This document shows, piece by piece, positions 4,408 to 33,505 of a stretch of DNA of 64,000 bases. This stretch comes from Macrostomum lignano (Eukaryota). The DNA lies in contig NIVC01002451.1 of assembly GCA_002269645.1 (NCBI GenBank), positions 108,437 to 172,436 of the forward strand, written 5' to 3'. The notes below the pieces were generated by a model. That model had not been told where the DNA came from and did no database searches. It was given only the letters and a program-made list of their open reading frames with translations. The translations under genes and the position numbers were made by a program. Each line of letters opens with the position of its first letter. Positions within the stretch are counted from its first letter, which is position 1.

Positions 4408-4967
4408 GCAAGTCCAGCCGGATATTCTCTCTGGAGAATCAATTTCGAGAAATTTCATATTTTCTTCGTTTCCATCTCACTGCCAGTGCAGGATAGAATT
4501 CCTGCAAACCGCCTTGCTACAGTGTGCTCAATATAAGGTTCTCAAGTATGCCATTCATTCTCAGCTCACTACTTCAGCTCACCCTGCCTCCTCCTGACTC
4601 CTCCTGCAGAAGCAGAAGCAAGGCAGGACCCGTTAACCAGTATTACAGATCGATCCTGTGGCAGAATCTGATTTTATCTCTCCCCCACACCCAGTCTCCC
4701 CGCCTCCCCATCGCTGTCCCAACCCTTATCTCACTGATGGATGGGGATTTCCGTGATTAAATTATCATCTACTCGGGATTGTGCCACCTTCAGCGCCTCT
4801 CCAATCTTGCCTGTCGCTCTCCTCCTATCTTCTTCTAATTTCTGCTTCTAGTGCCTCTGCTGCAGCGTCTGCTGCAACTTGGCTCATAAATCTTGCAACA
4901 TGGCATAAGGCTATACATTTATTCATTTACTAATGTAAATGGGAGCACAATAAGTTTACTGTAGGAA

Positions 4968-5813
4968 CTTATCCCACCGAGCTTATCCCACCGAGCTTAT
5001 CCCACCGAGCTTATCCCACCGAGCTTATCCCACCGAGCTTATCCCACCGAGCTTATCCCACCGAGCTTATCCCACCGAGCTTATCCCACCGAGCTTATCC
5101 CACCGAGCTTATCCCACCGAGCTTATCCCACCGAGCTTATCCCACCGAGCTTATCCCACCGAGCTTATCCCACCGAGCTTATCCCACCGAGCTTATCCCA
5201 CCGAGCTTATCCCACCGAGCTTATCCCACCGAGCTTATCCCACCGAGCTTATCCCACCGAGCTTATCCCACCGAGCTTATCCCACCGAGCTTATCCCACC
5301 GAGCTTATCCCACCGAGCTTATCCCACCGAGCTTATCCCACCGAGCTTATCCCACCGAGCTTATCCCACCGAGCTTATCCCACCGAGCTTATCCCACCGA
5401 GCTTATCCCACCGAGCTTATCCCACCGAGCTTATCCCACCGAGCTTATCCCACCGAGCTTATCCCACCGAGCTTATCCCACCGAGCTTATCCCACCGAGC
5501 TTATCCCACCGAGCTTATCCCACCGAGCTTATCCCACCGAGCTTATCCCACCGAGCTTATCCCACCGAGCTTATCCCACCGAGCTTATCCCACCGAGCTT
5601 ATCCCACCGAGCTTATCCCACCGAGCTTATCCCACCGAGCTTATCCCACCGAGCTTATCCCACCGAGCTTATCCCACCGAGCTTATCCCACCGAGCTTAT
5701 CCCACCGAGCTTATCCCACCGAGCTTATCCCACCGAGCTTATCCCACCGAGCTTATCCCACCGAGCTTATCCCACCGAGCTTATCCCACCGAGCTTATCC
5801 CACCGAGCTTATC
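4968..5813 (+). repeat. Perfect 14-bp minisatellite (about 60 copies)
   Basis: Unit CTTATCCCACCGAG. No variants seen. Confidence 0.98.
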
Positions 5814-6574: not shown

Positions 6575-7580
<1,006 letters not shown>

Positions 7581-8246: not shown

Positions 8247-10763
8247 GGAGAGGGAAGGAGACAATGAGGGGGAAGGAGACACAATGAGGGGGAAGGAGAC
8301 AATGAAGGGGAAGGAGACACAATGAGGGGGAAGGAGACACAATGAGGGGGAAGGAGACAATGAAGGGGAAGGAGACACAATGAGGGGGAAGGAGACACAA
8401 TGAGGGGGAAGGAGACACAATGAGGGGGAAGGAGACAATGAAGGGGAAGGAGACACAATGAGGGGGAAGGAGACAATGAAGGGGAAGGAGACACAATGAG
8501 GGGGGAAGGAGACACAATGAGGGGGGAAGGAGACACAATGAGGGGGAAGGAGACACAATGAAATGGAAGAGACACAATGATGGGGAAGATACACAATGTG
8601 GTGAAGAGACACAATGAGGTGAAGAGACACAATGAGGTGAAGATACACAATGAGGGGGGAAGAGACACAATGAGGTGAAGATACACAATGAGGGGGAAGA
8701 GACACAATGAGGGGGAAGAGACACAATGAGGGGGGAAGAGACACAATGAGGTGAAGATACACAATGAGGGGGAAGAGACACAATGAGGTGAAGAGACACA
8801 ATGAGGGGGAAGAGACACAATGAGGTGAAGATACACAATGAGGGGGGAAGAGACACAATGAGGGGGGAAGAGACACAATGAGGTGAAGAGACGCAATGAG
8901 GTGAAGATACACAATGAGGGGAGGAGACAATGAGGGGGAAGAGACACAATGAGGTGAAGAGACACAATGAGGGAAGAGACACAATGAGGTGAAGATACAC
9001 AATGATGGGGAAGAGACACAATGAGGTGAAAGAGACACAATGAGGTGAAGAGACACAATGAGGTGAAGATACACAATGATGGGGAAGAGACACAATGAGG
9101 GGGAAGAGACACAATGAGGGGGGAAGAGACACAATGAGGTGAAAGAGACACAATGAGGTGAAGAGACACAATGAGGTGAAGAGACACAATGAGGGAAAGA
9201 GACACAATGAGGTGAAGATACACAATGATGGGGAAGAGACACAATGAGGTGAAAGAGACACAATGAGGTGAAGAGACACAATGAGGTGAAGAGACACAAT
9301 GAGGTGAAGAGACACAATGAGGTGAAGAGACACAATGATGGGGAAGAGACACAATGAGGGGAAGAGACACAATGATGGGGAAGAGACACAATGAGGTGAA
9401 AGAGACACAATGAGGTGAAGAGACACAATGAGGTGAAGAGACACAATGAGGTGAAGAGACACAATGAGGTGAAGAGACACAATGATGGGGAAGAGACACA
9501 ATGAGGTGAAAGAGACACAATGAGGGGGAAGAGACACAATGAGGGGAAGAGACACAATGAGGTGAAGAGACACAATGAGGTGAAGATACACAATGATGGG
9601 GGAAGAGACACAATGAGGGGAAGAGACACAATGAGGTGAAGAGACACAATGATGGGGGAAGAGACACAATGAGGGGAAGAGACACAATGAGGGGAAGAGA
9701 CACAATGAGGTGAAGATACACAATGATGGGGGAAGAGACACAATGAGGTGAAAGAGACACAATGAGGAGGAAGAGACACAATGAGGTGAAAGAGACACAA
9801 TGAGGGGGAAGAGACACAATGAGGGGAAGAGACACAATGAGGTGAAGATACACAATGATGGGGGAAGAGACACAATGAGGGGAAGAGACACAATGAGGGG
9901 AAGAGACACAATGAGGAGGAAGAGACACAATTAGGGGAAGGAGACACGATGAAGTGGAAGAGACACAATGAGGGGAAGATACACAATGATGGGGGAAGAG
10001 ACACAATGAGGGGAAGAGACACAATGAGGAGGAAGAGACACAATTAGGGGAAGGAGACACGATGAAGTGGAAGAGACACAATGAGGTGAAAGAGACACAA
10101 TGAGGTGAAAGAGACACAAAGAGATAAAAGAGACACAATGAGGTGAAGAGACACAATGAGGGGGAAGAGACACAATGAGGTGAAGAGACACAATGAGGTG
10201 AAGATACACAATGAGGGGGAAGAGACACAATGAGGGGGAAGAGACACAATGAGGGGAAGAGACACAATGAGGAGGAAGAGACACAATTAGGGGAAGGAGA
10301 CACGATGAAGTGGAAGAGACACAATGAGGGGAAGAGACACAATGAGGTGAAAGAGACACAATGAGGTGAAAGAGACACAAAGAGATAAAAGAGACACAAT
10401 GAGGTGAAGAGACACAATGAGGGGGAAGAGACACAATGAGGTGAAGAGACACAATGAGGTGAAGATACACAATGAGGGGGAAGAGACACAATGAGGGGAA
10501 GAGACACAATGAGGTGAAAGAGACACAATGAGGGGAAGAGACACAATGAGGGGAAGAGACACAATGAGGGGAAGAGACACAATGAGGTGAAGAGACACAA
10601 TGAGGTGAAGAGACACAATGAGGGAAAGAGACACAATGAGGTGAAGAGACAAAATGTGGTGAAGAGACACAATGAGGGGAAGAGACACAATGAGGGGAAG
10701 AGACACAATGAGGGGAAGAGACACAATGAGGGGAAGAGACACAATGAGGGGAAGAGACACAAT
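8247..10763 (+). repeat. 19-21-bp purine-rich minisatellite, left part (interrupted by the BEL element)
   Basis: Unit about GAAGAGACACAATGAGGGG with variants and some multi-unit duplications. It produces spurious 584-854-aa ORFs. Confidence 0.98.
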
Positions 10764-11033
10764 TGTTTTGATGGTTCATTCAATAAATTGAGTCTTCGCA
10801 GTAAGCGACTATTTTTCGGCTACTAGCCAACCGAACAAAACAACCAGCGTGCGCACTCTCTCTGGAGAGGCTGATAACTATATATTGCAATAATTTTAAA
10901 TAAATGGGGTGGGTGCTGCTGAACATTATAAATGGGGGCTGGGGCTGAAACGTACGTATCAAAATCTCTGCTATGAAAGTTACGCGTAGGTGAATGAAAA
11001 GTACACTCGTACATGTAAGCCAACTCCTAAACA
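10764..11033 (-). repeat. 3' LTR of the BEL/Pao element (270 bp)
   Basis: Direct repeat of 17528-17797. Confidence 0.97.
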
Positions 11034-11047
11034 TTCCCCCCTTCCTG
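11034..11047 (-). other. Polypurine tract (PPT)
   Basis: The minus strand reads CAGGAAGGGGGGAA immediately before the TG of the 3' LTR. Confidence 0.85.
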
Positions 11048-11641: not shown

Positions 11642-14600
11642 TCACTCGAGATAGCACAGTTTGCTCACAGGCCGCACGAATACCGTCCCACCGACCTGGA
11701 CCTTGGCCACCCGGACTCGATTGTCTGAACCTGGGTAGACTTCGACTACTCGTCCCAACGGCCAGTGTCCCCGCGGTGAGTCTGCTTTGATGACGAGAAC
11801 GACATCACCTGGCTGTAAATCACGCTGCGGTCCCGCCCACTTGGCTCTCGGCTGCAACCCTGGCAGCCATTCGCGCATCCAGCGTCGCCAGACGTGCCTC
11901 ACGAGTTCTTGGACGCGCCGCCACCGCCGCCTCGGGTCAGCCGCGACGTCGTCGGGCACATCCGGCGCGAATTGTCCACCAGCTTGACCGTGCAGGAAAT
12001 GGTTTGGCGTTAGTGGCTCTTCGTCTCTCGGATTCGCCGATTGATAGGTGATGGGGCGCGAGTTGATAAGCGCCTCCGCTCCAGTGATCGCTGACTGAAG
12101 CTCCTCGTCGGTGACATCTGCGCTGCCCAGAATCGCGTGTAGCGCTCGCTTCGCAGCCCGAATCATCACCTCGTGGGCTCCACCAAAGTGCGGGGCGGCT
12201 GGCGGCTGGAAGTTCCACTTGACTCGCTGCTTGGATGTCTCGCGACTGATCCTTGTCCTGTCCAGCTCCTCCAGAAGTCGCAGTTCATCTGCACCTTTTA
12301 CAAAGTTGCCACCGTTGTCAGAATACATAGCCTTGGGTAAGCCACGCCTGTTCACCATTCGGTAGAAGGCGTTCAAGAAAGAGTCCGCGTCAAGGCTGTA
12401 GGTCATCTCGAGGTGTACCGCTCGCGTCTCGAGGCATGTGAACAGCGCCAAATAGCGTTTCTGCCTCTTCTTAAATCGGCCTTGAATAGTGACGAACGGC
12501 CCTCCCATGTCGACGGCTACGTTCGTGAAGGCTTTTAAGGATCCTGCGACACGGGCATCAGGCAGTGGCGCCATCTGTTGTACGATGGGACGAGCTTTCT
12601 CTCTCTTGCACACAGCGCATTCAACCTCCCACTCGCGAATAGCTTCCCGAGCACAGATAACCCAATACTTGGCTGACAGCGCCGCCAGAGTTTGGTTAGT
12701 CCCACCATGGCTCTGCTGCTCGTGATATTGTTTGATGATCAGCTTGGTGATCCAATGCTTCCGCGGCAAAATAGATGGATGTCTTGCTGCAAATGGCGCC
12801 TGTGGCCTGAATTTCAACCGGCCATCCACTCGTAGGACTCCTGCTGCATCACGTACCGGCTGCAAGCACCGCAGCTTCTTCTCGTTCACTGTATCCGTCT
12901 TGAACGCTTCCTCCTGAGCTAACCTTACCAAACGCTCCTCGACCTCCTCGAGCTCATCCACCAACAGCTCACCGCCGCTCCGCTGATACTTCTCCGTCTG
13001 ACAGTTCCGAATGAACCGCAACACCCAAGCGAAGACGCGCTGCAGTCGATGGAAACTAGAGAATCGCTCTGGTTTGAGTCGCCAGCCTGTCTTGTCTTCT
13101 TCATCGGTGGTGACCAGACATACGGGCTCTGCACAACGCTTCTGGATGCTTGCTAGCTCTCTTCGACGGGTATTCGCCTCAGTAGTTTCTGGCGCAACTG
13201 GAATCAACATTTCTGGCCAATCGTTTGAGCACCTCGCCAAGAATCCAGGGCCGTTCCACCACAGCTCGTTGTCCATCAGCTCTTGCACACTGCAGCCACG
13301 GGATGCCACATCCGCTGGATTCAGACCTGTTGGAACGTACCGCCATTGATTTGGCTGCACCTGCTGCTGGATGAAGGCGACTCGGTTCGCAACGAAAGGC
13401 TTGAACGCTCTACTCTGCCTGCGAATCCACCAAAGCACATTGTGACTGTCACTCCAAAACACCACAGACTCAATCGCGATCTCCAACGCCTCGGCCACTG
13501 CCCTTGCGAGCCGAAGTCCTAGGACTGCCGCCATCAACTCCAGTCGAGGGATGCTCACCGCCATCAATGGTGCTACCTTAGCCTTTGCAGCAACGAAACG
13601 GACCGTCGTCTTACTCATCGTTTCGCTCCGCAGATATACGACGGCTCCGTAGGCCTCTTGCGATGCGTCTACAAACGAGTGAAGTTCGATGGATCCGTTG
13701 TCTGGACGCAGACACCGAGGCACGGCTAGTCTCGTAGCTTTGGAGAGCTCACTGGTCCACTGAAACGCTTGATCAGCCAACTCAGGATCCAACGCTTCAT
13801 CCCACCCAACACCTTGTTGCCATGCCAACTGCAGCATTATCTTTCCTGTGATAACTACCGGAGCTAGGAAGCCACAGGGGTCAAACACCTCGGCCACACC
13901 GCGCAAAAGCAGTCTCTTCGTCATCACCTTGCCGCTAGCATTCGACTCGCTGATGGAAATTCCTAGGACGTCCTCTTTCGCATTCCAATTCACTCCAAGC
14001 GCCTTAGCGGTTCGGGCCTCACCTTTCAATAGCAACTCGGCGCGTTCTGCGCGGTCCTCGACTGGAACGTGTTGCAGCACTTCTAACGAATTCGACATCC
14101 ATTTGCAAGCTCGCATCCCTGCCTTGCTCCATAATTCTACGAGTTGTTGGAAGAGTTTCACCGCTTGGCCAACGGTTTCTACGGAGTCTAGACTGTCGTC
14201 CATATAAGTGGAATGCAGCACGGTGTTGGCCGCCAGCGGCAGCTGTTGCTGATAGTGTCGCGCATTCTCCTGTGCCACAAACTGAGCCAGAAACGGAGAG
14301 CAGTTTACGCCAAATACCACACTGCAGAACTCATAGCTCTTCGGCGTTTGCTTCAAGTCTAAGTCTCGCCACAGAAATCGGAAAAATCTTCTGTCCTCCG
14401 GCGCAATTCGAACTCTCAGATACATCTCCTCGATGTCGGCTGCTAGCGCCACGGGATGCTTCCGGAACCGTAGGAGCACCTTTAGCAAATCCTGCTGCAA
14501 CTTCGGTCCCGTATGAATGGTGTCATTTAGGCAGACCCCATTGCTCCGAGCCGCTGCATCAAACACAATTCGAACTTTGGTCGTCTCCTTATCGGCCCGC

Positions 14601-16666
14601 ACTATCGCGAAATGCGGCAAGAACCACTGGCCAGCCTGACTTGGCTCGCTGATGCCGACCTCCCGCACATAGCCTTTTGCCAGATGCTTGTCTATCACAG
14701 CCTGGTACGCCTTCGCTAGCTCCGGGTTCTTCAGCAAGCGCTTTTCTGTGCTGACGAGACGCTGTAGGGCAGCTTCGTTGTTCATAGGTAGTTCTTCCGG
14801 ATTCTTTTTCCAAGGAATCGCCACTTGAAACCTGCCGTTCTCCATCTTCAAGGATGCTCGTGTCGCTTCTACGATCTTTTGATCTTCAGCGGACATTCTG
14901 GCCTGCTGTCCTCCATCTGGCACTTCATCGATCTCCCACATCTTCCGCAGAAGATCAGATGCCTCGTTCTCCGCCGTCACCGTAAAGAATGTCTGCTGCT
15001 GCTGCTCTTCTGCAGTTCCTACTTGATTCACTGGTCCAACGCAGGTCCACCCAATTGGCGTCAGTCTGGCAATCGGCTCTCCAGGTTGCCCACCTACTTC
15101 GCGACAGGCAAAGTGCAAGTCTGCATTGTCCACACCAATGAGCATATCCACAGTCTGCTTCCCTTTAATTTTGTCGAACGGCACGCCCCTCAGATGAGCC
15201 CAACGCTTTGCAAGCTGGCTCCAATCTACGGCTTCCATCCCACCGGTCACTTTCTCAGTTGTGTGGGCCGTAACTGTGGCACGAAAGGCGCCGTCCAGAC
15301 TGCGGATGTCGACCTCAACCGGAACCGTCTGAAAGGTGCTCACCTGGCCGTTCAGAACCTTTACCGTCATCGGTTCGAGGTTGCCTTCCAAGCCGAGTTC
15401 CGCTGCAACGTCAGAGTTCAGGTACGACCGGGTGCTAGCGTCGTCCAGCAAGACATTCACTCGGACTTCCCGACCGCCGTTGGATAAAATCACGGGCACA
15501 GTCCTCAGCGCTATTGACGGCGATGTTCTGGCCAGTAAAGTGCATGCCTCTTGCGGCTCTTGAACTGTGCTCTTCTTCTCCTGGAAGGACTTTGGTCTTT
15601 CGATCGTTTTGGGCGACCCCCCTTCATGCGGATTCGCCGTTGTCGCCGCCGGCCCTCGTTGATGCAGCAGCCGATTATGGTTTGCTTTGCAGCCATCAAC
15701 ACCGCACACTCTCGCTCGCTTGCACGCACCGGCTAGATGGTTTGCTCCCAAGCAGCAGAAGCACAGGCGCTTGTCACGAACCGTCGCCCATCTGGCTCCA
15801 GGTTCCATTCGTTGAAACCTTGGGCAGCTCCAAACTCCGTGCTGTTCTCCGCAGAGACCACAACCTTTTCGCCCTTCCGCCTGTTCTTTGTTTTGGCTAT
15901 TCGAATCATTCGTCTTCACAAAAAACGAGCGTGCTGCGGCTGCCCCTCGGGAAACAGTTTTCTTGGCTTTTACACTGTCGTGCCGTCCGGTCTCACCGGA
16001 AGAAGCCACGCCTCTTACCGCCTCACACGCTACTGTCATGTACTCTGCCTCCGTCAGAAGCCATCGATGCAACGTTCTGAGCGAATCTTCTTTCCTAGCT
16101 TCTCCGATCCACCGATGAAAACGAGCTAGGGTTTCGGTTGGCAGCTTCTTTTGCACTCTCAAGTACATAAGTCCATTGTTGCTTAGCTCACTCTCTCGCC
16201 CTGCAGCCTGTAGATTAACTACCGTAACATCCAGCAAGTCGGCCAGCTTTTTTAATTGACTTGCATTCTCTATCTGAATAGGTTGGAAACTATCCAAGTC
16301 CTCCAGTGCCAGCATCAGTCTTCGTCTCTCTCCACCATACTCCCGCTCAAGCCTTTCCAGAGCCGCTTTGTAGGCGAACTCCGAGTAGCCAAGATTCGCA
16401 ACAAGTTTTAATGCCTCTCCTCGCAGCGACTGGCGCAATTGCAACAACTTATAGGCTTCTGAAGATGGCGAGGCATGCACGCAGGCATAGAAAGCCGCCC
16501 GCCATCCTTCAAACTCCCGTTTGTCTCCACTAAACACCGGTATCGCAACTCTCTGCAACTGCCTCCACATATCCTGACCGATTCTTTCCTCAGCCCAAGC
16601 TTTCGCTGTACATTCTGCTGCGGCGGCCGGTGAAGCCCCAATTGGCGAATTAGCTCCACCGTACAT
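11642..16666 (-). CDS. BEL/Pao Gag-Pol polyprotein (Gag core, three Zn knuckles, aspartic protease, RT, RNase H, integrase)
   Basis: 1674-aa ORF. Motifs: IPVFSGDKREFEGW (DUF1759-like); CGLCGEQHGVWSC, CFCCLGANHLAGAC and CGVDGCKANH; LLDDAST (protease); YMDD (RT); FVDASQEAYGAVVY (RNase H); DMGGP and SDNGGNF (integrase); DUF5641-like C-terminus. Confidence 0.97.
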   Translation of the reverse strand: MYGGANSPIGASPAAAAECTAKAWAEERIGQDMWRQLQRVAIPVFSGDKREFEGWRAAFYACVHASPSSEAYKLLQLRQSLRGEALKLVANLGYSEFAYKAALERLEREYGGERRRLMLALEDLDSFQPIQIENASQLKKLADLLDVTVVNLQAAGRESELSNNGLMYLRVQKKLPTETLARFHRWIGEARKEDSLRTLHRWLLTEAEYMTVACEAVRGVASSGETGRHDSVKAKKTVSRGAAAARSFFVKTNDSNSQNKEQAEGRKGCGLCGEQHGVWSCPRFQRMEPGARWATVRDKRLCFCCLGANHLAGACKRARVCGVDGCKANHNRLLHQRGPAATTANPHEGGSPKTIERPKSFQEKKSTVQEPQEACTLLARTSPSIALRTVPVILSNGGREVRVNVLLDDASTRSYLNSDVAAELGLEGNLEPMTVKVLNGQVSTFQTVPVEVDIRSLDGAFRATVTAHTTEKVTGGMEAVDWSQLAKRWAHLRGVPFDKIKGKQTVDMLIGVDNADLHFACREVGGQPGEPIARLTPIGWTCVGPVNQVGTAEEQQQQTFFTVTAENEASDLLRKMWEIDEVPDGGQQARMSAEDQKIVEATRASLKMENGRFQVAIPWKKNPEELPMNNEAALQRLVSTEKRLLKNPELAKAYQAVIDKHLAKGYVREVGISEPSQAGQWFLPHFAIVRADKETTKVRIVFDAAARSNGVCLNDTIHTGPKLQQDLLKVLLRFRKHPVALAADIEEMYLRVRIAPEDRRFFRFLWRDLDLKQTPKSYEFCSVVFGVNCSPFLAQFVAQENARHYQQQLPLAANTVLHSTYMDDSLDSVETVGQAVKLFQQLVELWSKAGMRACKWMSNSLEVLQHVPVEDRAERAELLLKGEARTAKALGVNWNAKEDVLGISISESNASGKVMTKRLLLRGVAEVFDPCGFLAPVVITGKIMLQLAWQQGVGWDEALDPELADQAFQWTSELSKATRLAVPRCLRPDNGSIELHSFVDASQEAYGAVVYLRSETMSKTTVRFVAAKAKVAPLMAVSIPRLELMAAVLGLRLARAVAEALEIAIESVVFWSDSHNVLWWIRRQSRAFKPFVANRVAFIQQQVQPNQWRYVPTGLNPADVASRGCSVQELMDNELWWNGPGFLARCSNDWPEMLIPVAPETTEANTRRRELASIQKRCAEPVCLVTTDEEDKTGWRLKPERFSSFHRLQRVFAWVLRFIRNCQTEKYQRSGGELLVDELEEVEERLVRLAQEEAFKTDTVNEKKLRCLQPVRDAAGVLRVDGRLKFRPQAPFAARHPSILPRKHWITKLIIKQYHEQQSHGGTNQTLAALSAKYWVICAREAIREWEVECAVCKREKARPIVQQMAPLPDARVAGSLKAFTNVAVDMGGPFVTIQGRFKKRQKRYLALFTCLETRAVHLEMTYSLDADSFLNAFYRMVNRRGLPKAMYSDNGGNFVKGADELRLLEELDRTRISRETSKQRVKWNFQPPAAPHFGGAHEVMIRAAKRALHAILGSADVTDEELQSAITGAEALINSRPITYQSANPRDEEPLTPNHFLHGQAGGQFAPDVPDDVAADPRRRWRRVQELVRHVWRRWMREWLPGLQPRAKWAGPQRDLQPGDVVLVIKADSPRGHWPLGRVVEVYPGSDNRVRVAKVQVGGTVFVRPVSKLCYLE

Positions 16667-16967: not shown

Positions 16968-17465
16968 CTATCTGACATCTAACTCGCGCTGCCTCTCTGC
17001 AAACTCCTGCTGCATTCTGCGCTCCTCCTCCTCCATCTCTATCCGCTGCCGCCTGACTGCCTCCAACTCCTTCTGTCGCATCTCTTTCTGCTCGATCTCC
17101 CTCGACTCTAGTCGCACCTCTCGTTCCCTCTTGCGCAATTCTCTCAGCAAATTTACAATCTCACCGTACTCAGTCTCCAGCTTTTCCAACTCCTTTACTG
17201 TCTGGACTTGCACTGGTAGATTCCCGACGACCTCGGGCAGAATCGCTTGTAGCACCGCACTAACTCGCTCGTAGTGGTCATCCAGAGTGCCGGCCAGCGG
17301 TTCCACGTCCGCTAAAGTAGCTCCGTCCGAGCCCAATACCTTCAGTAGACGATTCCGCTGCTTCGTGAACGCGCACTTGTCGACCGCTTTTCTGGCCTTC
17401 AGCGAAATGAGACGGCTGTCTCCCTCCGGCACTTGTTCTTGCATCTCTGCTTCTTCATCAGACAT
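16968..17465 (-). CDS. N-terminal Gag-like coiled-coil ORF of the BEL element (165 aa)
   Basis: First long ORF after the PBS. LKARKAVDKCAFTKQRNRLL resembles BEL Gag N-termini. It ends about 300 nt before the main ORF and in a different frame. Confidence 0.75.
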   Translation of the reverse strand: MSDEEAEMQEQVPEGDSRLISLKARKAVDKCAFTKQRNRLLKVLGSDGATLADVEPLAGTLDDHYERVSAVLQAILPEVVGNLPVQVQTVKELEKLETEYGEIVNLLRELRKREREVRLESREIEQKEMRQKELEAVRRQRIEMEEEERRMQQEFAERQRELDVR

Positions 17466-17507
17466 CTTTTACCAATGAAGTAGAACCACAAGTAGAACCA
17501 CAAGTAG

Positions 17508-17525
17508 AACCACGCTCTGCTACCA
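17508..17525 (-). other. Primer binding site for initiator tRNA-Met
   Basis: The minus strand reads TGGTAGCAGAGCGTGGTT, 2 nt after the 5' LTR. This is complementary to the ...CTCTGCTACCA 3' end of eukaryotic tRNAiMet. Confidence 0.85.
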
Positions 17526-17527
17526 GA

Positions 17528-17797
17528 TGTTTTGATGGTTCATTCAATAAATTGAGTCTTCGCAGTAAGCGACTATTTTTCGGCTACTAGCCAACCGAAC
17601 AAAACAACCAGCGTGCGCACTCTCTCTGGAGAGGCTGATAACTATATATTGCAATAATTTTAAATAAATGGGGTGGGTGCTGCTGAACATTATAAATGGG
17701 GGCTGGGGCTGAAACGTACGTATCAAAATCTCTGCTATGAAAGTTACGCGTAGGTGAATGAAAAGTACACTCGTACATGTAAGCCAACTCCTAAACA
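17528..17797 (-). repeat. 5' LTR of the BEL/Pao element (270 bp)
   Basis: Direct repeat of 10764-11033, followed on the minus strand by the PBS. Confidence 0.97.
17541..17584 (-). other. Spliced-leader-like sequence in the LTR (second copy at 10777-10820)
   Basis: The minus strand reads GCCGAAAAATAGTCGCTTACTGCGAAGACTCAATTTATTGAATG. It shares a 25-nt exact core and the terminal ATG with the Macrostomum SL as I recall it (not looked up). Confidence 0.75.
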
Positions 17798-17908
17798 ACA
17801 ATGAGGGGAAGAGACACAATGAGGTGAAGAGACACAATGTGGTGAAGAGACACAATGAGGGGGAAGAGACACAATGAGGGGAAGAGACACAATGAGGGGA
17901 AGAGACAC
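17798..17908 (+). repeat. Right remainder of the 19-21-bp minisatellite split by the BEL element
   Basis: The same GAAGAGACACAATGAGGGG unit resumes at the TSD. Confidence 0.95.
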
Positions 17909-18397: not shown

Positions 18398-21300
18398 TGA
18401 GGAGCACACTGTTGGGATGTCATTGGTGCTGAGGAGCACACTGTTGGGATGTCATTGGTGCTGAGGAGCACACTGTTGGGATGTCATTGGTGCTGAGGAG
18501 CACACTGTTGGGATGTCATTGGTGCTGAGGAGCACACTGGTGTCATTGGTGCTGAGGAGCACACTGTTGGGATGTCATTGGTGCTGAGGAGCACACTGTT
18601 GGGGTGTCATTGGTGCCGAGGAGCACACTGGTGTATCATTGGTGCTGAGGAGCACACTGTTGGGGTGTCATTGGTGCTGAGGAGCACACTGGTGTGTCAT
18701 CGGTGCTGAGAAGCACACTGTTGTGTCATTGGTGCTGAGGAGCACACTGGGGGATGTCATTGGTGCTGAGGAGCACACTGTTGGGATGTCATTGGTGCTG
18801 AGGAGCACACTGGGGGATGTCATTGGTGCTGAGGAGCACACTGGTGTGTCATTGGTGCTGAGAAGCACACTGTTGTGTCATTGGTGCTGAGGAGCACACT
18901 GGTGTGTCATCGGTGCTGAGAAGCACACTGTTGTGTCATTGGTGCTGAGGAGCACACTGTTGTGTCATTGGTGCTGAGGAGCACACTGGTGTGTCATTGG
19001 TGCTGAGGAGCACACTGGTGTGTCATTGGTGCTGAGGAGCACACTGGTTGTCATTGGTGCTGAGGAGCACACTGTTGTGTCATTGGTGCTGAGGAGCACA
19101 CTGGTGTGTCATTGGTGCTGAGGAGCACACTGGTGTGTCATTGGTGCTGAGGAGCACACTGTTGTGTCATTGGTGCTGAGGAGCACACTGGTGTGTCATT
19201 GGTGCTGAGGAGCACACTGGTGTGTCATTGGTGCTGAGGAGCACACTGGTTGTCATTGGTGCTGAGGAGCACACTGTTGTGTCATTGGTGCTGAGGAGCA
19301 CACTGTTGTGTCATTGGTGCTGAGGAGCACACTGGTGTGTCATTGGTGCTGAGGAGCACACTGTTGTGTCATTGGTGCTGAGGAGCACACTGGTGTGTCA
19401 TTGGTGCTGAGGAGCACACTGGTGTGTCATTGGTGCTGAGGAGCACACTGGTGTGTCATTGGTGCTGAGGAGCACACTGGTGTGTCATTGGTGCTGAGGA
19501 GCACACTGTTGTGTCATTGGTGCTGAGAAGCACACTGTTGTGTCATTGGTGCTGAGGAGCACACTGTTGTGTCATTGGTGCTGAAGAGCACACTGGTGTG
19601 TCATTGGTGCTGAGGAGCACACTGGTGTGTCATTGGTGCTGAGGAGCACACTGGTTGTCATTGGTGCTGAGGAGCACACTGTTGTGTCATTGGTGCTGAG
19701 GAGCACACTGTTGTGTCATTGGTGCTGAGGAGCACACTGTTGGGATGTCATTGGTGCTGAGGAGCACACTGGTGTGTCATTGGTGCTGAGGAGCACACTG
19801 TTGGGGTGTCATTGGTGCTGAGGAGCACACTGGGGGATGTCATTGGTGCTGAGGAGCACACTGGTGTGTCATCGGTGCTGAGAAGCACACTGTTGTGTCA
19901 TTGGTGCTGAGGAGCACACTGTTGTGTGATTGGTGCTGAGGAGCACACTGGTGTGTCATTGGTGCTGAGGAGCACACTGGTGTGTCATTGGTGCTGAGGA
20001 GCACACTGGTGTGTCATTGGTGCTGAGGAGCACACTGTTGTGTCATTGGTGCTGAGGAGCACACTGTTGTGTCATTGGTGCTGAGGAGCACACTGTTGTG
20101 TCATTGGTGCTGAGGAGCACACTGTTGTGTCATTGGTGCTGAGAAGCACACTGTTGTGTCATTGGTGCTGAGGAGCACACTGTTGTGTCATTGGTGCTGA
20201 GGAGCACACTGGTGTGTCATTGGTGCTGAGGAGCACACTGGTGTGTCATTGGTGCTGAGGAGCACACTGGTTGTCATTGGTGCTGAGGAGCACACTGTTG
20301 TGTCATTGGTGCTGAGGAGCACACTGTTGTGTCATTGGTGCTGAGGAGCACACTGGTGTGTCATTGGTGCTGAGGAGCACACTGTTGTGTCATTGGTGCT
20401 GAGGAGCACACTGTTGTGTCATTGGTGCTGAGGAGCACACTGTTGTGTCATTGGTGCTGAGGAGCACACTGTTGTGTCATTGGTGCTGAGGAGCACACTG
20501 TTGTGTCATTGGTGCTGAGGAGCACACTGTTGTGTCATTGGTGCTGAGGAGCACACTGTTGGGATGTCATTGGTGCTGAGGAGCACACTGGTGTGTCATT
20601 GGTGCTGAGGAGCACACTGGTTGTCATTGGTGCTGAGGAGCACACTGTTGTGTCATTGGTGCTGAGGAGCACACTGTTGTGTCATTGGTGCTGAGGAGCA
20701 CACTGGTGTGTCATTGGTGCTGAGGAGCACACTGGTGTGTCATTGGTGCTGAGGAGCACACTGTTGGGATGTCATTGGTGCTGAGGAGCACACTGGTGTG
20801 TCATTGGTGCTGAGGAGCACACTGTTGTGTCATTGGTGCTGAGGAGCACACTGGTGTGTCATTGGTGCTGAGGAGCACACTGGTGTGTCATTGGTGCTGA
20901 GGAGCACACTGGTTGTCATTGGTGCTGAGGAGCACACTGTTGTGTCATTGGTGCTGAGGAGCACACTGGTGTCATTGGTGCTGAGGAGCACACTGTTGTG
21001 TCATTGGTGCTGAGGAGCACACTGTGTGTCATTGGTGCTGAGGAGCACACTGTTGTGTCATTGGTGCTGAGGAGCACACTGGTGTGTCATTGGTGCTGAG
21101 GAGCACACTGGTGTGTCATTGGTGCTGAGGAGCACACTGGTGTGTCATTGGTGCTGAGGAGCACACTGGTGTGTCATTGGTGCTGAGGAGCACACTGTTG
21201 TGTCATTGGTGCTGAGGAGCACACTGTTGTGTCATTGGTGCTGAGGAGCACACTGGTGTGTCATTGGTGCTGAGGAGCACACTGGTTGTCATTGGTGCTG

Positions 21301-24300
21301 AGGAGCACACTGTTGTGTCATTGGTGCTGAGGAGCACACTGTTGTGTCATTGGTGCTGAGGAGCACACTGTTGTGTCATTGGTGCTGAGGAGCACACTGG
21401 TGTGTCATTGGTGCTGAGGAGCACACTGTTGTGTCATTGGTGCTGAGGAGCACACTGGTGTCATTGGTGCTGAGGAGCACACTGGTGTGTCATTGGTGCT
21501 GAGGAGCACACTGTTGTGTCATTGGTGCTGAGGAGCACACTGTTGTGTCATTGGTGCTGAGGAGCACACTGTGTGTCATTGGTGCTGAGGAGCACACTGT
21601 GTGTCATTGGTGCTGAGGAGCACACTGGTTGTCATTGGTGCTGAGGAGCACACTGTTGTGTCATTGGTGCTGAGGAGCACACTGTTGTGTCATTGGTGCT
21701 GAGGAGCACACTGTTGTGTCATTGGTGCTGAGGAGCACACTGTTGTGTCATTGGTGCTGAGGAGCACACTGTTGTGTCATTGGTGCTGAGGAGCACACTG
21801 TTGTGTCATTGGTGCTGAGGAGCACACTGGTGTGTCATTGGTGCTGAGGAGCACACTGGTGTGTCATTGGTGCTGAGGAGCACACTGGTTGTCATTGGTG
21901 CTGAGGAGCACACTGTTGTGTCATTGGTGCTGAGGAGCACACTGTTGTGTCATTGGTGCTGAGGAGCACACTGGTGTGTCATTGGTGCTGAGGAGCACAC
22001 TGTTGTGTCATTGGTGCTGAGGAGCACACTGTTGTGTCATTGGTGCTGAGGAGCACACTGTTGTGTCATTGGTGCTGAGGAGCACACTGTTGTGTCATTG
22101 GTGCTGAGGAGCACACTGTTGTGTCATTGGTGCTGAGGAGCACACTGTTGTGTCATTGGTGCTGAGGAGCACACTGTTGTGTCATTGGTGCTGAGGAGCA
22201 CACTGGTGTGTCATTGGTGCTGAGGAGCACACTGGTTGTCATTGGTGCTGAGGAGCACACTGTTGTGTCATTGGTGCTGAGGAGCACACTGTTGTGTCAT
22301 TGGTGCTGAGGAGCACACTGTGTGTCATTGGTGCTGAGGAGCACACTGTGTGTCATTGGTGCTGAGGAGCACACTGTTGTGTCATTGGTGCTGAGGAGCA
22401 CACTGGTGTGTCATTGGTGCTGAGGAGCACACTGTTGTGTCATTGGTGCTGAGGAGCACACTGGTGTGTCATTGGTGCTGAGGAGCACACTGTGTGTCAT
22501 TGGTGCTGAGGAGCACACTGTTGTCATTGGTGCTGAGGAGCACACTGTTGTGTCATTGGTGCTGAGGAGCACACTGTGTGTCATTGGTGCTGAGGAGCAC
22601 ACTGTTGTGTCATTGGTGCTGAGGAGCACACTGGTGTGTCATTGGTGCTGAGGAGCACACTGGTGTGTCATTGGTGCTGAGGAGCACACTGGTGTCATTG
22701 GTGCTGAGGAGCACACTGTTGTGTCATTGGTGCTGAGGAGCACACTGTTGTGTCATTGGTGCTGAGGAGCACACTGTTGTGTCATTGGTGCTGAGGAGCA
22801 CACTGTTGTGTCATTGGTGCTGAGGAGCACACTGGTGTGTCATTGGTGCTGAGGAGCACACTGGTGTGTCATTGGTGCTGAGGAGCACACTGGTTGTCAT
22901 TGGTGCTGAGGAGCACACTGGTTGTCATTGGTGCTGAGGAGCACACTGTTGTGTCATTGGTGCTGAGGAGCACACTGGTGTGTCATTGGTGCTGAGGAGC
23001 ACACTGTGTGTCATTGGTGCTGAGGAGCACACTGTGTGTCATTGGTGCTGAGGAGCACACTGTTGTGTCATTGGTGCTGAGGAGCACACTGGTTGTCATT
23101 GGTGCTGAGGAGCACACTGTTGTGTCATTGGTGCTGAGGAGCACACTGGTGTGTCATTGGTGCTGAGGAGCACACTGTTGTGTCATTGGTGCTGAGGAGC
23201 ACACTGTGTGTCATTGGTGCTGAGGAGCACACTGTTGTGTCATTGGTGCTGAGGAGCACACTGTGTGTCATTGGTGCTGAGGAGCACACTGGTGTGTCAT
23301 TGGTGCTGAGGAGCACACTGGTTGTCATTGGTGCTGAGGAGCACACTGTTGTGTCATTGGTGCTGAGGAGCACACTGTTGTGTCATTGGTGCTGAGGAGC
23401 ACACTGTTGTGTCATTGGTGCTGAGGAGCACACTGTTGTGTCATTGGTGCTGAGGAGCACACTGTGTGTCATTGGTGCTGAGGAGCACACTGTTGTGTCA
23501 TTGGTGCTGAGGAGCACACTGGTGTCATTGGTGCTGAGGAGCACACTGGTGTGTCATTGGTGCTGAGGAGCACACTGTTGTGTCATTGGTGCTGAGGAGC
23601 ACACTGTGTGTCATTGGTGCTGAGGAGCACACTGGTGTGTCATTGGTGCTGAGGAGCACACTGTGTGTCATTGGTGCTGAGGAGCACACTGTTGTCATTG
23701 GTGCTGAGGAGCACACTGTTGTGTCATTGGTGCTGAGGAGCACACTGTTGTGTCATTGGTGCTGAGGAGCACACTGTTGTGTCATTGGTGCTGAGGAGCA
23801 CACTGTTGTGTCATTGGTGCTGAGGAGCACACTGTTGTGTCATTGGTGCTGAGGAGCACACTGTTGTGTCATTGGTGCTGAGGAGCACACTGTGTGTCAT
23901 TGGTGCTGAGGAGCACACTGTGTGTCATTGGTGCTGAGGAGCACACTGGTTGTCATTGGTGCTGAGGAGCACACTGTTGTGTCATTGGTGCTGAGGAGCA
24001 CACTGTTGTGTCATTGGTGCTGAGGAGCACACTGTGTGTCATTGGTGCTGAGGAGCACACTGTTGTGTCATTGGTGCTGAGGAGCACACTGTTGTGTCAT
24101 TGGTGCTGAGGAGCACACTGTTGTGTCATTGGTGCTGAGGAGCACACTGTTGTGTCATTGGTGCTGAGGAGCACACTGTTGTGTCATTGGTGCTGAGGAG
24201 CACACTGTTGTGTCATTGGTGCTGAGGAGCACACTGTTGTGTCATTGGTGCTGAGGAGCACACTGGTGTGTCATTGGTGCTGAGGAGCACACTGGTTGTC

Positions 24301-27300
24301 ATTGGTGCTGAGGAGCACACTGTTGTGTCATTGGTGCTGAGGAGCACACTGTTGTGTCATTGGTGCTGAGGAGCACACTGGTGTGTCATTGGTGCTGAGG
24401 AGCACACTGTGTGTCATTGGTGCTGAGGAGCACACTGTTGTGTCATTGGTGCTGAGGAGCACACTGTGTGTCATTGGTGCTGAGGAGCACACTGTTGTGT
24501 CATTGGTGCTGAGGAGCACACTGTGTGTCATTGGTGCTGAGGAGCACACTGTGTGTCATTGGTGCTGAGGAGCACACTGGTGTCATTGGTGCTGAGGAGC
24601 ACACTGTTGTGTCATTGGTGCTGAGGAGCACACTGTGTGTCATTGGTGCTGAGGAGCACACTGTTGTGTCATTGGTGCTGAGGAGCACACTGGTTGTCAT
24701 TGGTGCTGAGGAGCACACTGGTGTGTCATTGGTGCTGAGGAGCACACTGTGTGTCATTGGTGCTGAGGAGCACACTGTTGTGTCATTGGTGCTGAGGAGC
24801 ACACTGTTGTGTCATTGGTGCTGAGGAGCACACTGTTGTGTCATTGGTGCTGAGGAGCACACTGTTGTGTCATTGGTGCTGAGGAGCACACTGGTGTGTC
24901 ATTGGTGCTGAGGAGCACACTGGTGTGTCATTGGTGCTGAGGAGCACACTGTTGTGTCATTGGTGCTGAGGAGCACACTGTTGTGTCATTGGTGCTGAGG
25001 AGCACACTGTTGTGTCATTGGTGCTGAGGAGCACACTGTGTGTCATTGGTGCTGAGGAGCACACTGGTGTCATTGGTGCTGAGGAGCACACTGTTGTCAT
25101 TGGTGCTGAGGAGCACACTGTTGTGTCATTGGTGCTGAGGAGCACACTGGTGTGTCATTGGTGCTGAGGAGCACACTGTGTGTCATTGGTGCTGAGGAGC
25201 ACACTGTGTGTCATTGGTGCTGAGGAGCACACTGTTGTGTCATTGGTGCTGAGGAGCACACTGGTTGTCATTGGTGCTGAGGAGCACACTGTTGTGTCAT
25301 TGGTGCTGAGGAGCACACTGTGTGTCATTGGTGCTGAGGAGCACACTGTGTGTCATTGGTGCTGAGGAGCACACTGGTTGTCATTGGTGCTGAGGAGCAC
25401 ACTGTTGTGTCATTGGTGCTGAGGAGCACACTGTTGTGTCATTGGTGCTGAGGAGCACACTGGTGTCATTGGTGCTGAGGAGCACACTGGTTGTCATTGG
25501 TGCTGAGGAGCACACTGTTGTGTCATTGGTGCTGAGGAGCACACTGTTGTGTCATTGGTGCTGAGGAGCACACTGTTGTGTCATTGGTGCTGAGGAGCAC
25601 ACTGTTGTGTCATTGGTGCTGAGGAGCACACTGTGTGTCATTGGTGCTGAGGAGCACACTGTTGTGTCATTGGTGCTGAGGAGCACACTGGTTGTGTCAT
25701 TGGTGCTGAGGAGCACACTGTTGTGTCATTGGTGCTGAGGAGCACACTGTTGTGTCATTGGTGCTGAGGAGCACACTGTGTGTCATTGGTGCTGAGGAGC
25801 ACACTGTTGTGTCATTGGTGCTGAGGAGCACACTGTGTGTCATTGGTGCTGAGGAGCACACTGTGTGTCATTGGTGCTGAGGAGCACACTGGTGTCATTG
25901 GTGCTGAGGAGCACACTGTTGTGTCATTGGTGCTGAGGAGCACACTGTTGTGTCATTGGTGCTGAGGAGCACACTGTTGTGTCATTGGTGCTGAGGAGCA
26001 CACTGTTGTGTCATTGGTGCTGAGGAGCACACTGTGTGTCATTGGTGCTGAGGAGCACACTGTGTGTCATTGGTGCTGAGGAGCACACTGTTGTGTCATT
26101 GGTGCTGAGGAGCACACTGTTGTGTCATTGGTGCTGAGGAGCACACTGTTGTGTCATTGGTGCTGAGGAGCACACTGTTGTGTCATTGGTGCTGAGGAGC
26201 ACACTGTTGTGTCATTGGTGCTGAGGAGCACACTGTTGTGTCATTGGTGCTGAGGAGCACACTGTTGTGTCATTGGTGCTGAGGAGCACACTGTGTGTCA
26301 TTGGTGCTGAGGAGCACACTGTGTGTCATTGGTGCTGAGGAGCACACTGTTGTGTCATTGGTGCTGAGGAGCACACTGTTGTGTCATTGGTGCTGAGGAG
26401 CACACTGTGTGTCATTGGTGCTGAGGAGCACACTGTTGTGTCATTGGTGCTGAGGAGCACACTGTTGTGTCATTGGTGCTGAGGAGCACACTGTTGTGTC
26501 ATTGGTGCTGAGGAGCACACTGTTGTGTCATTGGTGCTGAGGAGCACACTGTTGTGTCATTGGTGCTGAGGAGCACACTGTTGTGTCATTGGTGCTGAGG
26601 AGCACACTGTTGTGTCATTGGTGCTGAGGAGCACACTGTTGTGTCATTGGTGCTGAGGAGCACACTGTTGTGTCATTGGTGCTGAGGAGCACACTGTTGT
26701 GTCATTGGTGCTGAGGAGCACACTGTTGTGTCATTGGTGCTGAGGAGCACACTGTTGTGTCATTGGTGCTGAGGAGCACACTGTGTGTCATTGGTGCTGA
26801 GGAGCACACTGTTGTGTCATTGGTGCTGAGGAGCACACTGTTGTGTCATTGGTGCTGAGGAGCACACTGTTGTGTCATTGGTGCTGAGGAGCACACTGTT
26901 GTGTCATTGGTGCTGAGGAGCACACTGTTGTGTCATTGGTGCTGAGGAGCACACTGTGTGTCATTGGTGCTGAGGAGCACACTGTTGTGTCATTGGTGCT
27001 GAGGAGCACACTGTTGTGTCATTGGTGCTGAGGAGCACACTGTTGTGTCATTGGTGCTGAGGAGCACACTGTGTGTCATTGGTGCTGAGGAGCACACTGT
27101 TGTCATTGGTGCTGAGGAGCACACTGTTGTGTCATTGGTGCTGAGGAGCACACTGTTGTGTCATTGGTGCTGAGGAGCACACTGTGTGTCATTGGTGCTG
27201 AGGAGCACACTGTTGTGTCATTGGTGCTGAGGAGCACACTGTTGTGTCATTGGTGCTGAGGAGCACACTGTTGTGTCATTGGTGCTGAGGAGCACACTGT

Positions 27301-33300: not shown

Positions 33301-33505
33301 CACTGGTGTGTCATTGGTGCTGAGGAGCACACTGTTGTGTCATTGGTGCTGAGGAGCACACTGTTGTGTCATTGGTGCTGAGGAGCACACTGTTGTGTCA
33401 TTGGTGCTGAGGAGCACACTGTTGGGATGTCATTGGTGCTGAGGAGCACACTGTTGTGTCATTGGTGCTGAGGAGCACACTTTTGGGGTGTCATTGGTGC
33501 TGAGG
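18398..33505 (+). repeat. 15.1-kb satellite array, 29-bp main unit (about 520 copies)
   Basis: Unit GTCATTGGTGCTGAGGAGCACACTGTTGT. Units vary from about 27 to 31 bp in the segment after CACACT. Confidence 0.99.

What the first reader, a model, noticed from the sequence alone, without database searches (positions are those of the whole stretch)
17541..17584. BEL/Pao LTRs carry a sense-oriented mimic of the host trans-spliced leader
Seen: 13 nt from the end of each LTR (also at 10777-10820), the element strand reads GCCGAAAAATAGTCGCTTACTGCGAAGACTCAATTTATTGAATG. It ends in ATG, and no GT donor follows. Knowledge (recalled, not looked up): the Macrostomum lignano SL is about GCCGTAAAGACGGTCTCTTACTGCGAAGACTCAATTTATTGCATG, and flatworm SLs end in a conserved AUG. 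By hand alignment, about 38 of 45 positions match, including an exact 25-nt core and both ends. Inference: a trans-spliced element RNA was reverse transcribed and the SL became fixed in the LTR. A young element would then make 'pre-leadered' transcripts. Possible roles include SL-dependent translation, a promoter element (the SL acts as one in nematode SL RNA genes), looking like self to small-RNA silencing, or template switching onto host SL-bearing mRNAs. I know of no description of this in LTR elements.
Basis: partly seen in the sequence, partly recalled or inferred. Interest (0 to 1): 0.92.

Follow-up and report, generated by a model that had tools for sequence, protein, structure and literature searches.

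The report
Host spliced-leader copy inside retrotransposon LTRs
A young, intact BEL/Pao retrotransposon of the flatworm Macrostomum lignano carries, near the end of both of its long terminal repeats, a copy of the exon part of the host's trans-spliced leader. It is most likely a fossil of an element RNA that was trans-spliced and then reverse transcribed; the case is neat but not unprecedented, and nothing here shows that the copy has a function.

Summary
On the minus strand, 17584->17541 and 10820->10777 read GCCGAAAAATAGTCGCTTACTGCGAAGACTCAATTTATTGAATG, 13 nt from the 3' end of two identical 270-nt LTRs. The best alignment gives 39/45 identities with an exact 25-nt core, far beyond chance. 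The host is M. lignano: a window gene is 99% identical to one of its proteins.

Similarity to real SL RNA genes, which I recovered from public contigs, covers only the SL exon. It stops at the exon/intron boundary, with no GTAAG donor, no Sm site and no shared upstream sequence. So the ATG|AACC junction looks like a splice junction. The best reading is that an element RNA trans-spliced in U5 was reverse transcribed, and the SL became part of U5.

The element is intact and recently inserted, with a 5-bp TSD, PBS, PPT and a 1674-aa Pao-type ORF. The SL-bearing LTR is therefore compatible with replication.

The functional ideas are untested, and some fail on logic or anatomy. TATA-like motifs lie 64-110 nt upstream, so the mimic is probably internal to the 5' UTR, and its AUG opens a 7-codon uORF.

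A 2025 paper reports leader fragments in LTR/LINE loci of parasitic flatworms and explains them the same way. No other family members could be reached, so conservation could not be tested.

The parts
17528..17797 (-). 5' LTR, 270 nt (TGTTTAGG...CAAAACA)
   Evidence: 100% identical direct repeat with 10764-11033. Boundaries read.
10764..11033 (-). 3' LTR, 270 nt
17541..17584 (-). SL-exon copy in the 5' LTR (LTR positions 214-257). 39/45 identical to the Macrostomum SL, with an exact 25-nt core.
   Evidence: SL sequence from PMC5173321 and PMC10468722
10777..10820 (-). SL-exon copy in the 3' LTR
17528..17540 (-). 13-nt LTR tail AACCATCAAAACA after the SL ATG. Inferred to be the exon side of an old trans-splice junction. 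It ends in the terminal CA of the LTR.
   Evidence: only 2/13 matches to the SL RNA intron start GTAAGACACCGGT
17520..17543 (-). uORF opened by the SL-derived ATG (MNHQNIW*), ending in the PBS. This is the only ATG between LTR position 130 and the ORF1 start.
17510..17525 (-). Primer binding site TGGTAGCAGAGCGTGG, 2 nt after the LTR. From my own knowledge, its complement ...CTCTGCTACCA resembles the 3' end of initiator tRNA-Met. The same TGGTAGCAGAG is found in distant relatives.
17478..17513 (-). Three perfect 12-nt tandem repeats (GTGGTTCTACTT on the element strand) overlapping the 3' end of the PBS
16968..17465 (-). ORF1, 165 aa, Glu/Arg-rich, with no homolog and no Pfam family
11642..16666 (-). 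ORF2, 1674 aa gag-pol: DUF1759, aspartic protease, RVT_1, Peptidase_A17 (Pao), integrase H2C2, DUF5641
11034..11046 (-). Polypurine tract AGGAAGGGGGGAA directly upstream of the 3' LTR
17798..17802 (-). Target-site duplication ATTGT, 5' side, inside the 18-nt satellite
10759..10763 (-). Target-site duplication ATTGT, 3' side, inside the 18-nt satellite

Best explanation
The 44-nt segment is a genomic relic of the host SL exon that now forms most of the 3' half of U5 in a replication-competent BEL/Pao lineage of Macrostomum lignano.

Inferred origin:
1. An ancestral element RNA was SL-trans-spliced at an acceptor in U5, 13 nt before the LTR end and 15 nt before the PBS.
2. Reverse transcriptase, primed at the PBS, copied those 13 nt and then the whole leader up to its capped 5' end.
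3. At that forced stop it switched to a co-packaged full-length RNA in U5 and finished R normally.
4. U5 is copied into both LTRs, so the insert was inherited by both and by all descendants.

Today it is most likely a tolerated passenger. It is transcribed as an internal part of the 5' UTR, adds a 7-codon uORF and shares in ordinary U5 duties next to the PBS. It probably has no SL-specific activity.

Shown: the sequence match, its exon-only extent, its position, and the intactness and youth of the element. Inferred: the trans-splicing of the ancestor, the template switch, the U3/R/U5 borders and the lack of function.
For: - The match is real: 39/45 identities, local score 32 against 13-19 in shuffles, and an exact 25-mer with 0 expected by chance.
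- The copy is full length. The 5' 17 nt alone give 12/17, P=0.004, so cDNA synthesis reached the 5' end of an SL-bearing RNA.
- Only the exon is present. Real SL RNA genes (L005, L007) continue with GTAAGACACCG, an Sm-like ATTTTTAG and two hairpins. The LTR continues with AACCATCAAAACA (2/13 matches), and nothing aligns upstream either.
- What follows the junction is the element's own LTR terminus and PBS. The spliced RNA was therefore the element's own.
- The insertion is young and the element intact: identical LTRs, 5-bp TSD, PBS, PPT and a 1674-aa ORF. The mimic nevertheless differs from an SL that is invariant in three Macrostomum species and two environmental genes. This suggests the capture predates this insertion and has survived retrotransposition cycles.
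- LTR-element RNAs can be trans-spliced: a Cer1 mRNA in C. elegans receives SL1 (PMC3315495).
- The same explanation was offered for leader fragments in LTR/LINE loci of parasitic flatworms (PMC12582326).
Against: - No other family member or SL-less sister element could be examined. The ancestral acceptor and the single-capture scenario are therefore untested.
- The transcription start, R/U5 border and poly(A) site are only guessed from motifs: TATAA at 104, TTTAAAA at 134, AATATATAG at 148-156 and a GT-rich stretch at 190-211. The LTR has no AATAAA.
- Differences from the SL cluster in the 5' part: 5 of 6 fall in the first 17 of 45 columns (P=0.023, from a split chosen after seeing the data). 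This could mean constraint on the 3' 28 nt, and so some function. It could also be the generic constraint on U5 next to the PBS, or chance.
- The differences could have arisen at the capture event itself, so the argument that the capture is old is not firm.
Confidence: 0.6

Rival explanations
1. Functional mimicry. The SL copy is kept by selection because it benefits the element. It could recruit SL-binding translation or stability factors, act as a promoter or 5'-UTR element, or create a blind spot for small-RNA silencing, since antisense small RNAs to it would also hit about 30% of host mRNAs.
For: The 3' 28 nt carry 1 difference and the 5' 17 nt carry 5 (P=0.023). The mimic persists in an intact, recently transposed element. 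The single 3' change (GCATG to GAATG) creates AATGAA, a weak poly(A)-signal variant, at LTR position 254.
Against: TATA-like motifs lie 64-110 nt upstream, so the mimic is probably not at the RNA 5' end. From general knowledge of nematode and flatworm SL translation, known SL effects depend on the trimethylguanosine cap next to the leader, and a genome-encoded copy would lack that cap. The SL AUG is out of frame and opens a uORF. There is no shared upstream promoter sequence with SL RNA genes. A blind spot of about 28 nt cannot protect a 7-kb element from silencing. The 3' skew is equally expected from ordinary U5/PBS constraints. No population or family data were available.
Confidence: 0.13
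2. Capture without trans-splicing of the element. During minus-strand synthesis, reverse transcriptase switched from U5 onto a co-packaged host RNA and back. That RNA could be the free SL exon intermediate, the SL RNA or an SL-bearing mRNA.
For: From general knowledge, retroviral particles package small host RNAs and template switching is frequent. The insert is short and bounded by element sequence on both sides.
Against: This needs two non-homologous switches, and one must fall exactly at the last base of the SL exon. With SL RNA or an mRNA as template, some intron or downstream mRNA sequence would be expected, and none is seen (2/13 matches to the intron). Only the short-lived free exon intermediate gives the exact boundary.
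Confidence: 0.12
3. DNA-level origin. The LTR picked up part of an SL RNA gene, or the element descends from an insertion into an SL gene array, as with the SL-gene-specific non-LTR elements of trypanosomes and nematodes.
For: Site-specific retrotransposons of SL RNA genes exist (SLACS, CZAR, NeSL-1; from my own knowledge).
Against: The LTR has no donor, no Sm site, no intron hairpins and no upstream similarity to SL genes. The copy lies inside both LTRs, not in the flanks. The flanks are an 18-nt satellite with a clean 5-bp TSD.
Confidence: 0.02
4. Chance resemblance or assembly artefact.
For: None.
Against: An exact 25-mer has 0 expected occurrences in 100 shuffles. The local score is 32, against at most 19 in shuffled windows. 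The segment is identical in both LTRs of a structurally complete element.
Confidence: 0.01

Closest known systems
Leader fragments in LTR and LINE loci of parasitic flatworms (PMC12582326, Mol Biol Evol 2025)
   Same: SL-derived sequence with no other SL RNA feature, lying in retrotransposon-annotated DNA. That includes loci tagged LTR/Pao and a same-strand pair 8.4 kb apart tagged LTR/Gypsy. [quoted passage not shown]
   Different: There the loci were filtered out as noise and described only as 'partial leader sequences', with no anatomy given. Here the host is a free-living macrostomid and the leader is full length (GCCG to ATG). It is placed precisely in U5, 15 nt from the PBS, in both LTRs of an intact, recently inserted BEL/Pao element.
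Relict spliced leaders in retroposed genes ('recycled cDNAs') of dinoflagellates (Slamovits and Keeling 2008, cited in PMC12582326; PMC12014239)
   Same: A genome-encoded SL exon joined directly to downstream transcript sequence at the former splice junction. This is evidence of reverse transcription of a trans-spliced RNA.
   Different: Those are host-gene retrocopies made in trans and are evolutionary dead ends for the machinery that made them. Here the relic lies in the LTR of the retroelement itself and is propagated with every new copy.
SL1 trans-splicing of Cer1 (Ty3/gypsy) mRNA in C. elegans (PMC3315495)
   Same: Shows that an LTR-retrotransposon transcript can receive the host SL at an acceptor near its 5' end.
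   Different: In Cer1 the SL is added to RNA, only on the spliced 2.4-kb mRNA. The 8-kb genomic RNA is not trans-spliced, and no SL is encoded in the Cer1 LTR.
Genuine Macrostomum SL RNA gene (109 nt; PMC8629364; examples L005 615-723 and L007 from 1589)
   Same: The 45-nt exon, 39/45 identical, with a 25-nt exact core and the terminal ATG.
   Different: The LTR lacks the GTAAG donor, the Sm-like site and stem-loops 2 and 3. It cannot donate a leader.
SL-gene-specific non-LTR retrotransposons (SLACS, CZAR, CRE, NeSL-1; from my own knowledge)
   Same: A link between a retroelement and the SL.
   Different: Those elements insert into SL RNA genes and so are flanked by SL sequence. This is an LTR element carrying the SL internally, inserted in a satellite.

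Membership tests
BEL/Pao LTR retrotransposon | Pao-type aspartic peptidase (Peptidase_A17) together with RT and integrase in one polyprotein, plus the BEL/Pao-associated DUF1759 and DUF5641 | tested here: met
   Pfam: PF05380 3.8e-48, PF18701 9.6e-28, PF03564 1.8e-12, PF00078 5.4e-09, PF17921 1.1e-07. The best homologs are BEL/Pao polyproteins at about 50% identity.
BEL/Pao LTR retrotransposon | Long terminal direct repeats with TG...CA ends, a target-site duplication, a PBS after the 5' LTR and a PPT before the 3' LTR | tested here: met
   270-nt LTRs, 100% identical, TGTTT...AAACA. TSD ATTGT. PBS TGGTAGCAGAGCGTGG. PPT AGGAAGGGGGGAA.
SL RNA gene | SL exon at the 5' end | tested here: met
   39/45 identity with an exact 25-nt core
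SL RNA gene | GT splice donor (GTAAG in Macrostomum) directly after the exon | tested here: not met
   The LTR has AACCATC after the ATG, and the leader holds no GT[GA]AG. Real genes have GTAAGAC.
SL RNA gene | Sm-like site and the canonical three-stem-loop fold | tested here: not met
   The real gene folds canonically (z=-3.0). The LTR has no counterpart downstream of the exon. The fold of the U5-PBS region is not exceptional (z=-1.45). No Rfam family was hit in the window.
SL relic from reverse transcription of a trans-spliced RNA | Genomic SL exon joined at its exact 3' end to transcript sequence, without intron sequence | tested here: met
   Similarity ends at the ATG, and what follows is the element's own LTR end and PBS.
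SL relic from reverse transcription of a trans-spliced RNA | A trans-splice acceptor at the homologous site in the unspliced precursor, or in relatives that lack the relic | not testable with these tools
   No SL-less family member is available. Relatives at 50% amino-acid identity (L008, L009) share the PBS, but their LTRs cannot be aligned.
Functional SL mimic | Excess conservation of the mimic relative to the rest of the LTR across copies | not testable with these tools
   Only this one element is in the window, and no relatives are in any collection.
Functional SL mimic | Transcripts begin at the first base of the mimic | tested here: inconclusive
   This rests on motifs only: TATA-like motifs start 64, 80 and 110 nt upstream, which argues against a start at the GCCG. 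There are no 5'-end data.

The most novel reading that the evidence does not exclude
An active BEL/Pao family keeps a host-SL look-alike in its U5 and 5' UTR under selection. The 3' 28 nt of the leader would be retained because they recruit host SL-recognising factors, or because the host cannot raise small RNAs against them without harming its own SL-bearing mRNAs. That would be molecular mimicry of the trans-splicing system by a transposon.
Probability: 0.1. Interest if true: 0.8.

Novelty: new member of a known kind. Interest (0 to 1): 0.42.

Why it matters
- It shows cleanly that host trans-splicing acts on LTR-retrotransposon RNA in a free-living flatworm. It also shows that the product can re-enter the replication cycle and be fixed in the LTR. 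This gives a natural marker for template switching during BEL/Pao reverse transcription.
- M. lignano has transgenesis, 5'-end and poly(A)-end RNA-seq data, and LTR reporter assays (PMC5730564, PMC12801592). Whether a genome-encoded leader affects translation or silencing can therefore be tested directly.
- There is a practical consequence. Pipelines that pull out 'SL-containing reads' to call trans-splice sites could mistake transcripts of this family for trans-spliced RNAs. Those transcripts share a 25-nt exact stretch with the SL, and 27 of its last 28 nt. The result would be a false acceptor 13 nt before the LTR end.

Tried and rejected
- **Family members.** All of these searches came up empty:
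  - Exact look-ups of ORF2 and ORF1 found nothing on record.
  - A homolog search with ORF2 gave at best 50% identity, in other phyla.
  - A homolog search with ORF1 gave nothing.
  - A viral-contig scan with the 25-mer gave 0 hits, and one with the polyprotein also gave nothing.
  - BLAST of the element against the window found only itself.
- **Core scans of metagenome and genome contigs.** These returned real SL RNA genes (L005, L007) and SL-capped environmental mRNAs (L001-L004, L006). All read GCATG after the core, so none is an LTR-type copy.
- **Distant BEL/Pao relatives (L008-L012).** They carry no Macrostomum SL (best local score 13). Their LTRs cannot be aligned, although the PBS TGGTAGCAGAG is shared.
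- **Rfam.** No family was hit in the window.
- **RNA structure.** An apparent stem enclosing the mimic (UGUUUUG...CAAAACA) appears in the minimum-energy fold, but the region's fold is not better than shuffles (z=-1.45). I dropped it.
- **Shared promoter with SL RNA genes.** Rejected, because nothing aligns upstream of the exon.
- **Supplementary consensus sequences.** The files of the M. lignano LTR paper are not held, and Wasik et al. 2015 is not held.
- **Acceptor just before the mimic.** CTAG at 209-212 does not match the M. lignano trans-splice acceptor motif [T/C]TNCAG. The only matches in the LTR and leader start at 84 and 167.

Full report
**What is there.** On the minus strand, 17584->17541 and 10820->10777 both read GCCGAAAAATAGTCGCTTACTGCGAAGACTCAATTTATTGAATG. 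The 25-nt core CTTACTGCGAAGACTCAATTTATTG occurs exactly twice in the window, and none is expected by chance. The two copies lie in two 270-nt direct repeats that are 100% identical, 17528-17797 and 10764-11033. They occupy LTR positions 214-257, 13 nt from the LTR 3' end.

**The element.** The repeats bound a 7,034-bp element on the minus strand.
- The LTRs run TGTTTAGG...CAAAACA.
- A 5-bp target-site duplication, ATTGT, lies at 17798-17802 and 10759-10763.
- The insertion interrupts an 18-nt satellite that continues on both sides.
- A PBS, TGGTAGCAGAGCGTGG, starts 2 nt after the 5' LTR.
- A polypurine tract, AGGAAGGGGGGAA, directly precedes the 3' LTR.
- ORF1 (16968-17465, 165 aa) has no Pfam hit and no homolog.
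- ORF2 (11642-16666, 1674 aa) carries DUF1759, an aspartic protease, RVT_1, Peptidase_A17 (Pao), integrase H2C2 and DUF5641.

This is a structurally complete BEL/Pao element, and its identical LTRs indicate a recent insertion. Its nearest relatives in a 5.8-billion-protein collection are only about 50% identical and come from other phyla. Two of them share the PBS core TGGTAGCAGAG. From my own knowledge, that core matches the 3' end of initiator tRNA-Met.

**Host and leader.** Window ORF 59796-60296 (histone-fold, NF-YB-like) is 99% identical to NCBI protein BOX15_Mlig016644g1 of Macrostomum lignano. The published SL is CCGTAAAGACGGTCTCTTACTGCGAAGACTCAATTTATTGCATG in M. lignano (PMC5173321). 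The 45-mer with a leading G was assembled for M. cliftonense, and the same sequence minus the first two bases for M. hystrix (PMC10468722 Table S3).

The optimal alignment of the SL to the LTR segment gives 39/45 identities with one gap. Its local score is 32, against 13-19 for the best hit in each of ten shuffled windows. The diverged 5' 17 nt are still significantly similar on their own (12/17, P=0.004). The whole leader, from GCCG to ATG, is therefore represented.

**Comparison with real SL RNA genes.** Scanning public contigs for the 25-mer recovered two genuine SL RNA genes. One is L005, an environmental contig. The other is L007, a contig of a supposedly bacterial MAG that also carries a eukaryotic U1 snRNA gene. 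The scan also found five environmental mRNAs that begin with the leader.

Both genes have the canonical 45-nt exon. It is followed by GTAAGACACCG, a hairpin, an Sm-like ATTTTTAG and a second hairpin, and the RNA folds canonically (z=-3.0). This agrees with the 109-nt gene described in PMC8629364.

Aligned to these genes, the LTR matches only across the exon. Upstream nothing aligns. Downstream the LTR has AACCATCAAAACA, which matches the intron start at 2 of 13 positions. The leader region holds no GT[GA]AG donor. The LTR therefore holds the exon half of the SL RNA only, ending exactly at the splice site. What follows the junction is the element's own LTR terminus and PBS.

**How it most likely arose (inference).** The exon-only extent and the exact boundary point to a splice junction, meaning that an element RNA was itself trans-spliced in U5. 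The full-length leader implies that reverse transcriptase ran to the capped 5' end of that RNA. A predicted GT-rich stretch (190-211) lies between the promoter region and the mimic. In the model I propose it belongs to U5. The simplest route is then a single forced template switch from the end of the trans-spliced RNA into U5 of a co-packaged full-length RNA, followed by normal R-mediated transfer. U5 is copied into both LTRs, which explains the two copies.

LTR-element RNAs can be trans-spliced: a Cer1 mRNA in C. elegans receives SL1 (PMC3315495). In M. lignano an acceptor without an upstream donor is expected to be trans-spliced (PMC8629364). One alternative needs no splicing of the element, namely two switches through a free SL exon. 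It is less parsimonious but not excluded. DNA-level capture of an SL gene and chance are excluded.

**What it does now.** Nothing here shows an SL-specific function.
- TATA-like motifs begin at LTR positions 104, 134 and 150, which is 64-110 nt before the mimic. The RNA probably starts upstream, so the mimic would be internal, not a 'pre-leader'.
- There is no AATAAA in the LTR, only AATATA at 148 and AATGAA at 254.
- The SL-derived ATG is the only upstream ATG in the predicted leader. It opens a 7-codon uORF (MNHQNIW*) that stops inside the PBS, out of frame with ORF1.
- Five of the six differences from the SL fall in the first 17 columns (P=0.023, from a split chosen after seeing the data). 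This is compatible with constraint on the PBS-proximal part, but ordinary U5 function would give the same pattern.
A promoter role lacks the upstream similarity. A 28-nt silencing blind spot would not protect a 7-kb element.

The SL is invariant in three species and two environmental genes, while the mimic differs at six positions inside an element with identical LTRs. The capture therefore probably predates this insertion, and the SL-bearing LTR is compatible with retrotransposition. This is an inference, because the changes could date from the capture event itself.

**What is known.** PMC12582326 (2025) discarded 597 SL-like loci associated with mobile elements, mainly LTR and LINE, in parasitic flatworms. 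[quoted passage not shown] Its supplementary table tags such loci as LTR/Pao and LTR/Gypsy, including a same-strand pair 8.4 kb apart in Hymenolepis diminuta. Relict leaders in retroposed genes are well known in dinoflagellates.

The recent survey of M. lignano LTR elements, which lists five Bel/Pao families, does not mention the SL (PMC12801592). Neither does the genome paper (PMC5730564). PMC8629364 notes one other genome-encoded SL copy in M. lignano, at the 5' end of a protein-coding gene.

**Verdict.** The functional reading and the claim of complete novelty are not supported. This is a clear, well-placed example of a phenomenon already noted in passing elsewhere. The decisive test, conservation across family copies together with mapping of RNA 5' and 3' ends, needs the M. 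lignano genome and RNA-seq data, which these tools could not reach.

Noticed in passing
L007 1121-1283 and from 1589 to about 1697: A contig filed under a Flavobacteriaceae MAG (JAGQZA010000190.1) carries a eukaryotic U1 snRNA gene (Rfam 151.7 bits) and a complete Macrostomum-type SL RNA gene. This looks like flatworm DNA contaminating a bacterial genome bin.
   Followed up: partly
L005 590-723: An environmental contig (Ga0302322_100095745) holds a complete SL RNA gene preceded by a partial duplicate of the leader start (GCCGTAAAC). Its exon is identical to the published SL.
   Followed up: partly
L001-L004 and L006, 5' ends: Five contigs of one environmental sample (Ga0316592) begin with the Macrostomum leader followed by coding sequence. 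They are SL-capped mRNAs of a Macrostomum-like animal in what appears to be a metatranscriptome.
   Followed up: no
window 8252-10763 and 17798-17908: An 18-nt satellite (GGGAAGAGACACAATGAG, about 135 copies on the left side) is split by the element. The TSD ATTGT is part of the satellite unit.
   Followed up: yes
window 18398-33505: A 15-kb array of a 29-nt satellite (TGAGGAGCACACTGTTGTGTCATTGGTGC, 524 copies, 96% matches) with a strong G-over-C skew.
   Followed up: no
window 3832-4417, 4968-5813, 6575-7580, 34344-35349: Further simple arrays: two 14-nt satellites, the second with 60 perfectly identical copies, plus (GTTA)n and (AGAT)n tracts of about 1 kb each.
   Followed up: no
window 16968-17465 (-): ORF1 of the element is a 165-aa Glu/Arg-rich protein that looks like a coiled coil. 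It has no Pfam family and no homolog at E<=0.001 in 5.8 billion proteins. It is separated from ORF2 by about 300 nt and lies in another frame.
   Followed up: partly
window 17478-17513 (-): Three perfect 12-nt tandem repeats (GTGGTTCTACTT) begin inside the PBS and fill most of the space between the PBS and the ORF1 start. Their role is unknown.
   Followed up: no
window 46097-46552 and 47322-48140 (-); 59796-60296 (+): Host genes: exons of a sodium/bile-acid symporter family (SBF) gene, and a histone-fold NF-YB-like gene that is 99% identical to an M. lignano protein.
   Followed up: partly
L011 and L012: In one metagenome-derived assembly (ERZ25066847), the distant BEL/Pao relative P0003 occurs as head-to-tail tandem copies sharing one LTR. 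The 6.4-kb self-repeat is 100% identical.
   Followed up: no
PMC12582326 supplementary table: Hymenolepis diminuta scaffold299 has two same-strand SL loci 8.4 kb apart, both tagged LTR/Gypsy and in the same sequence cluster. This may be another element with SL sequence in both LTRs.
   Followed up: no
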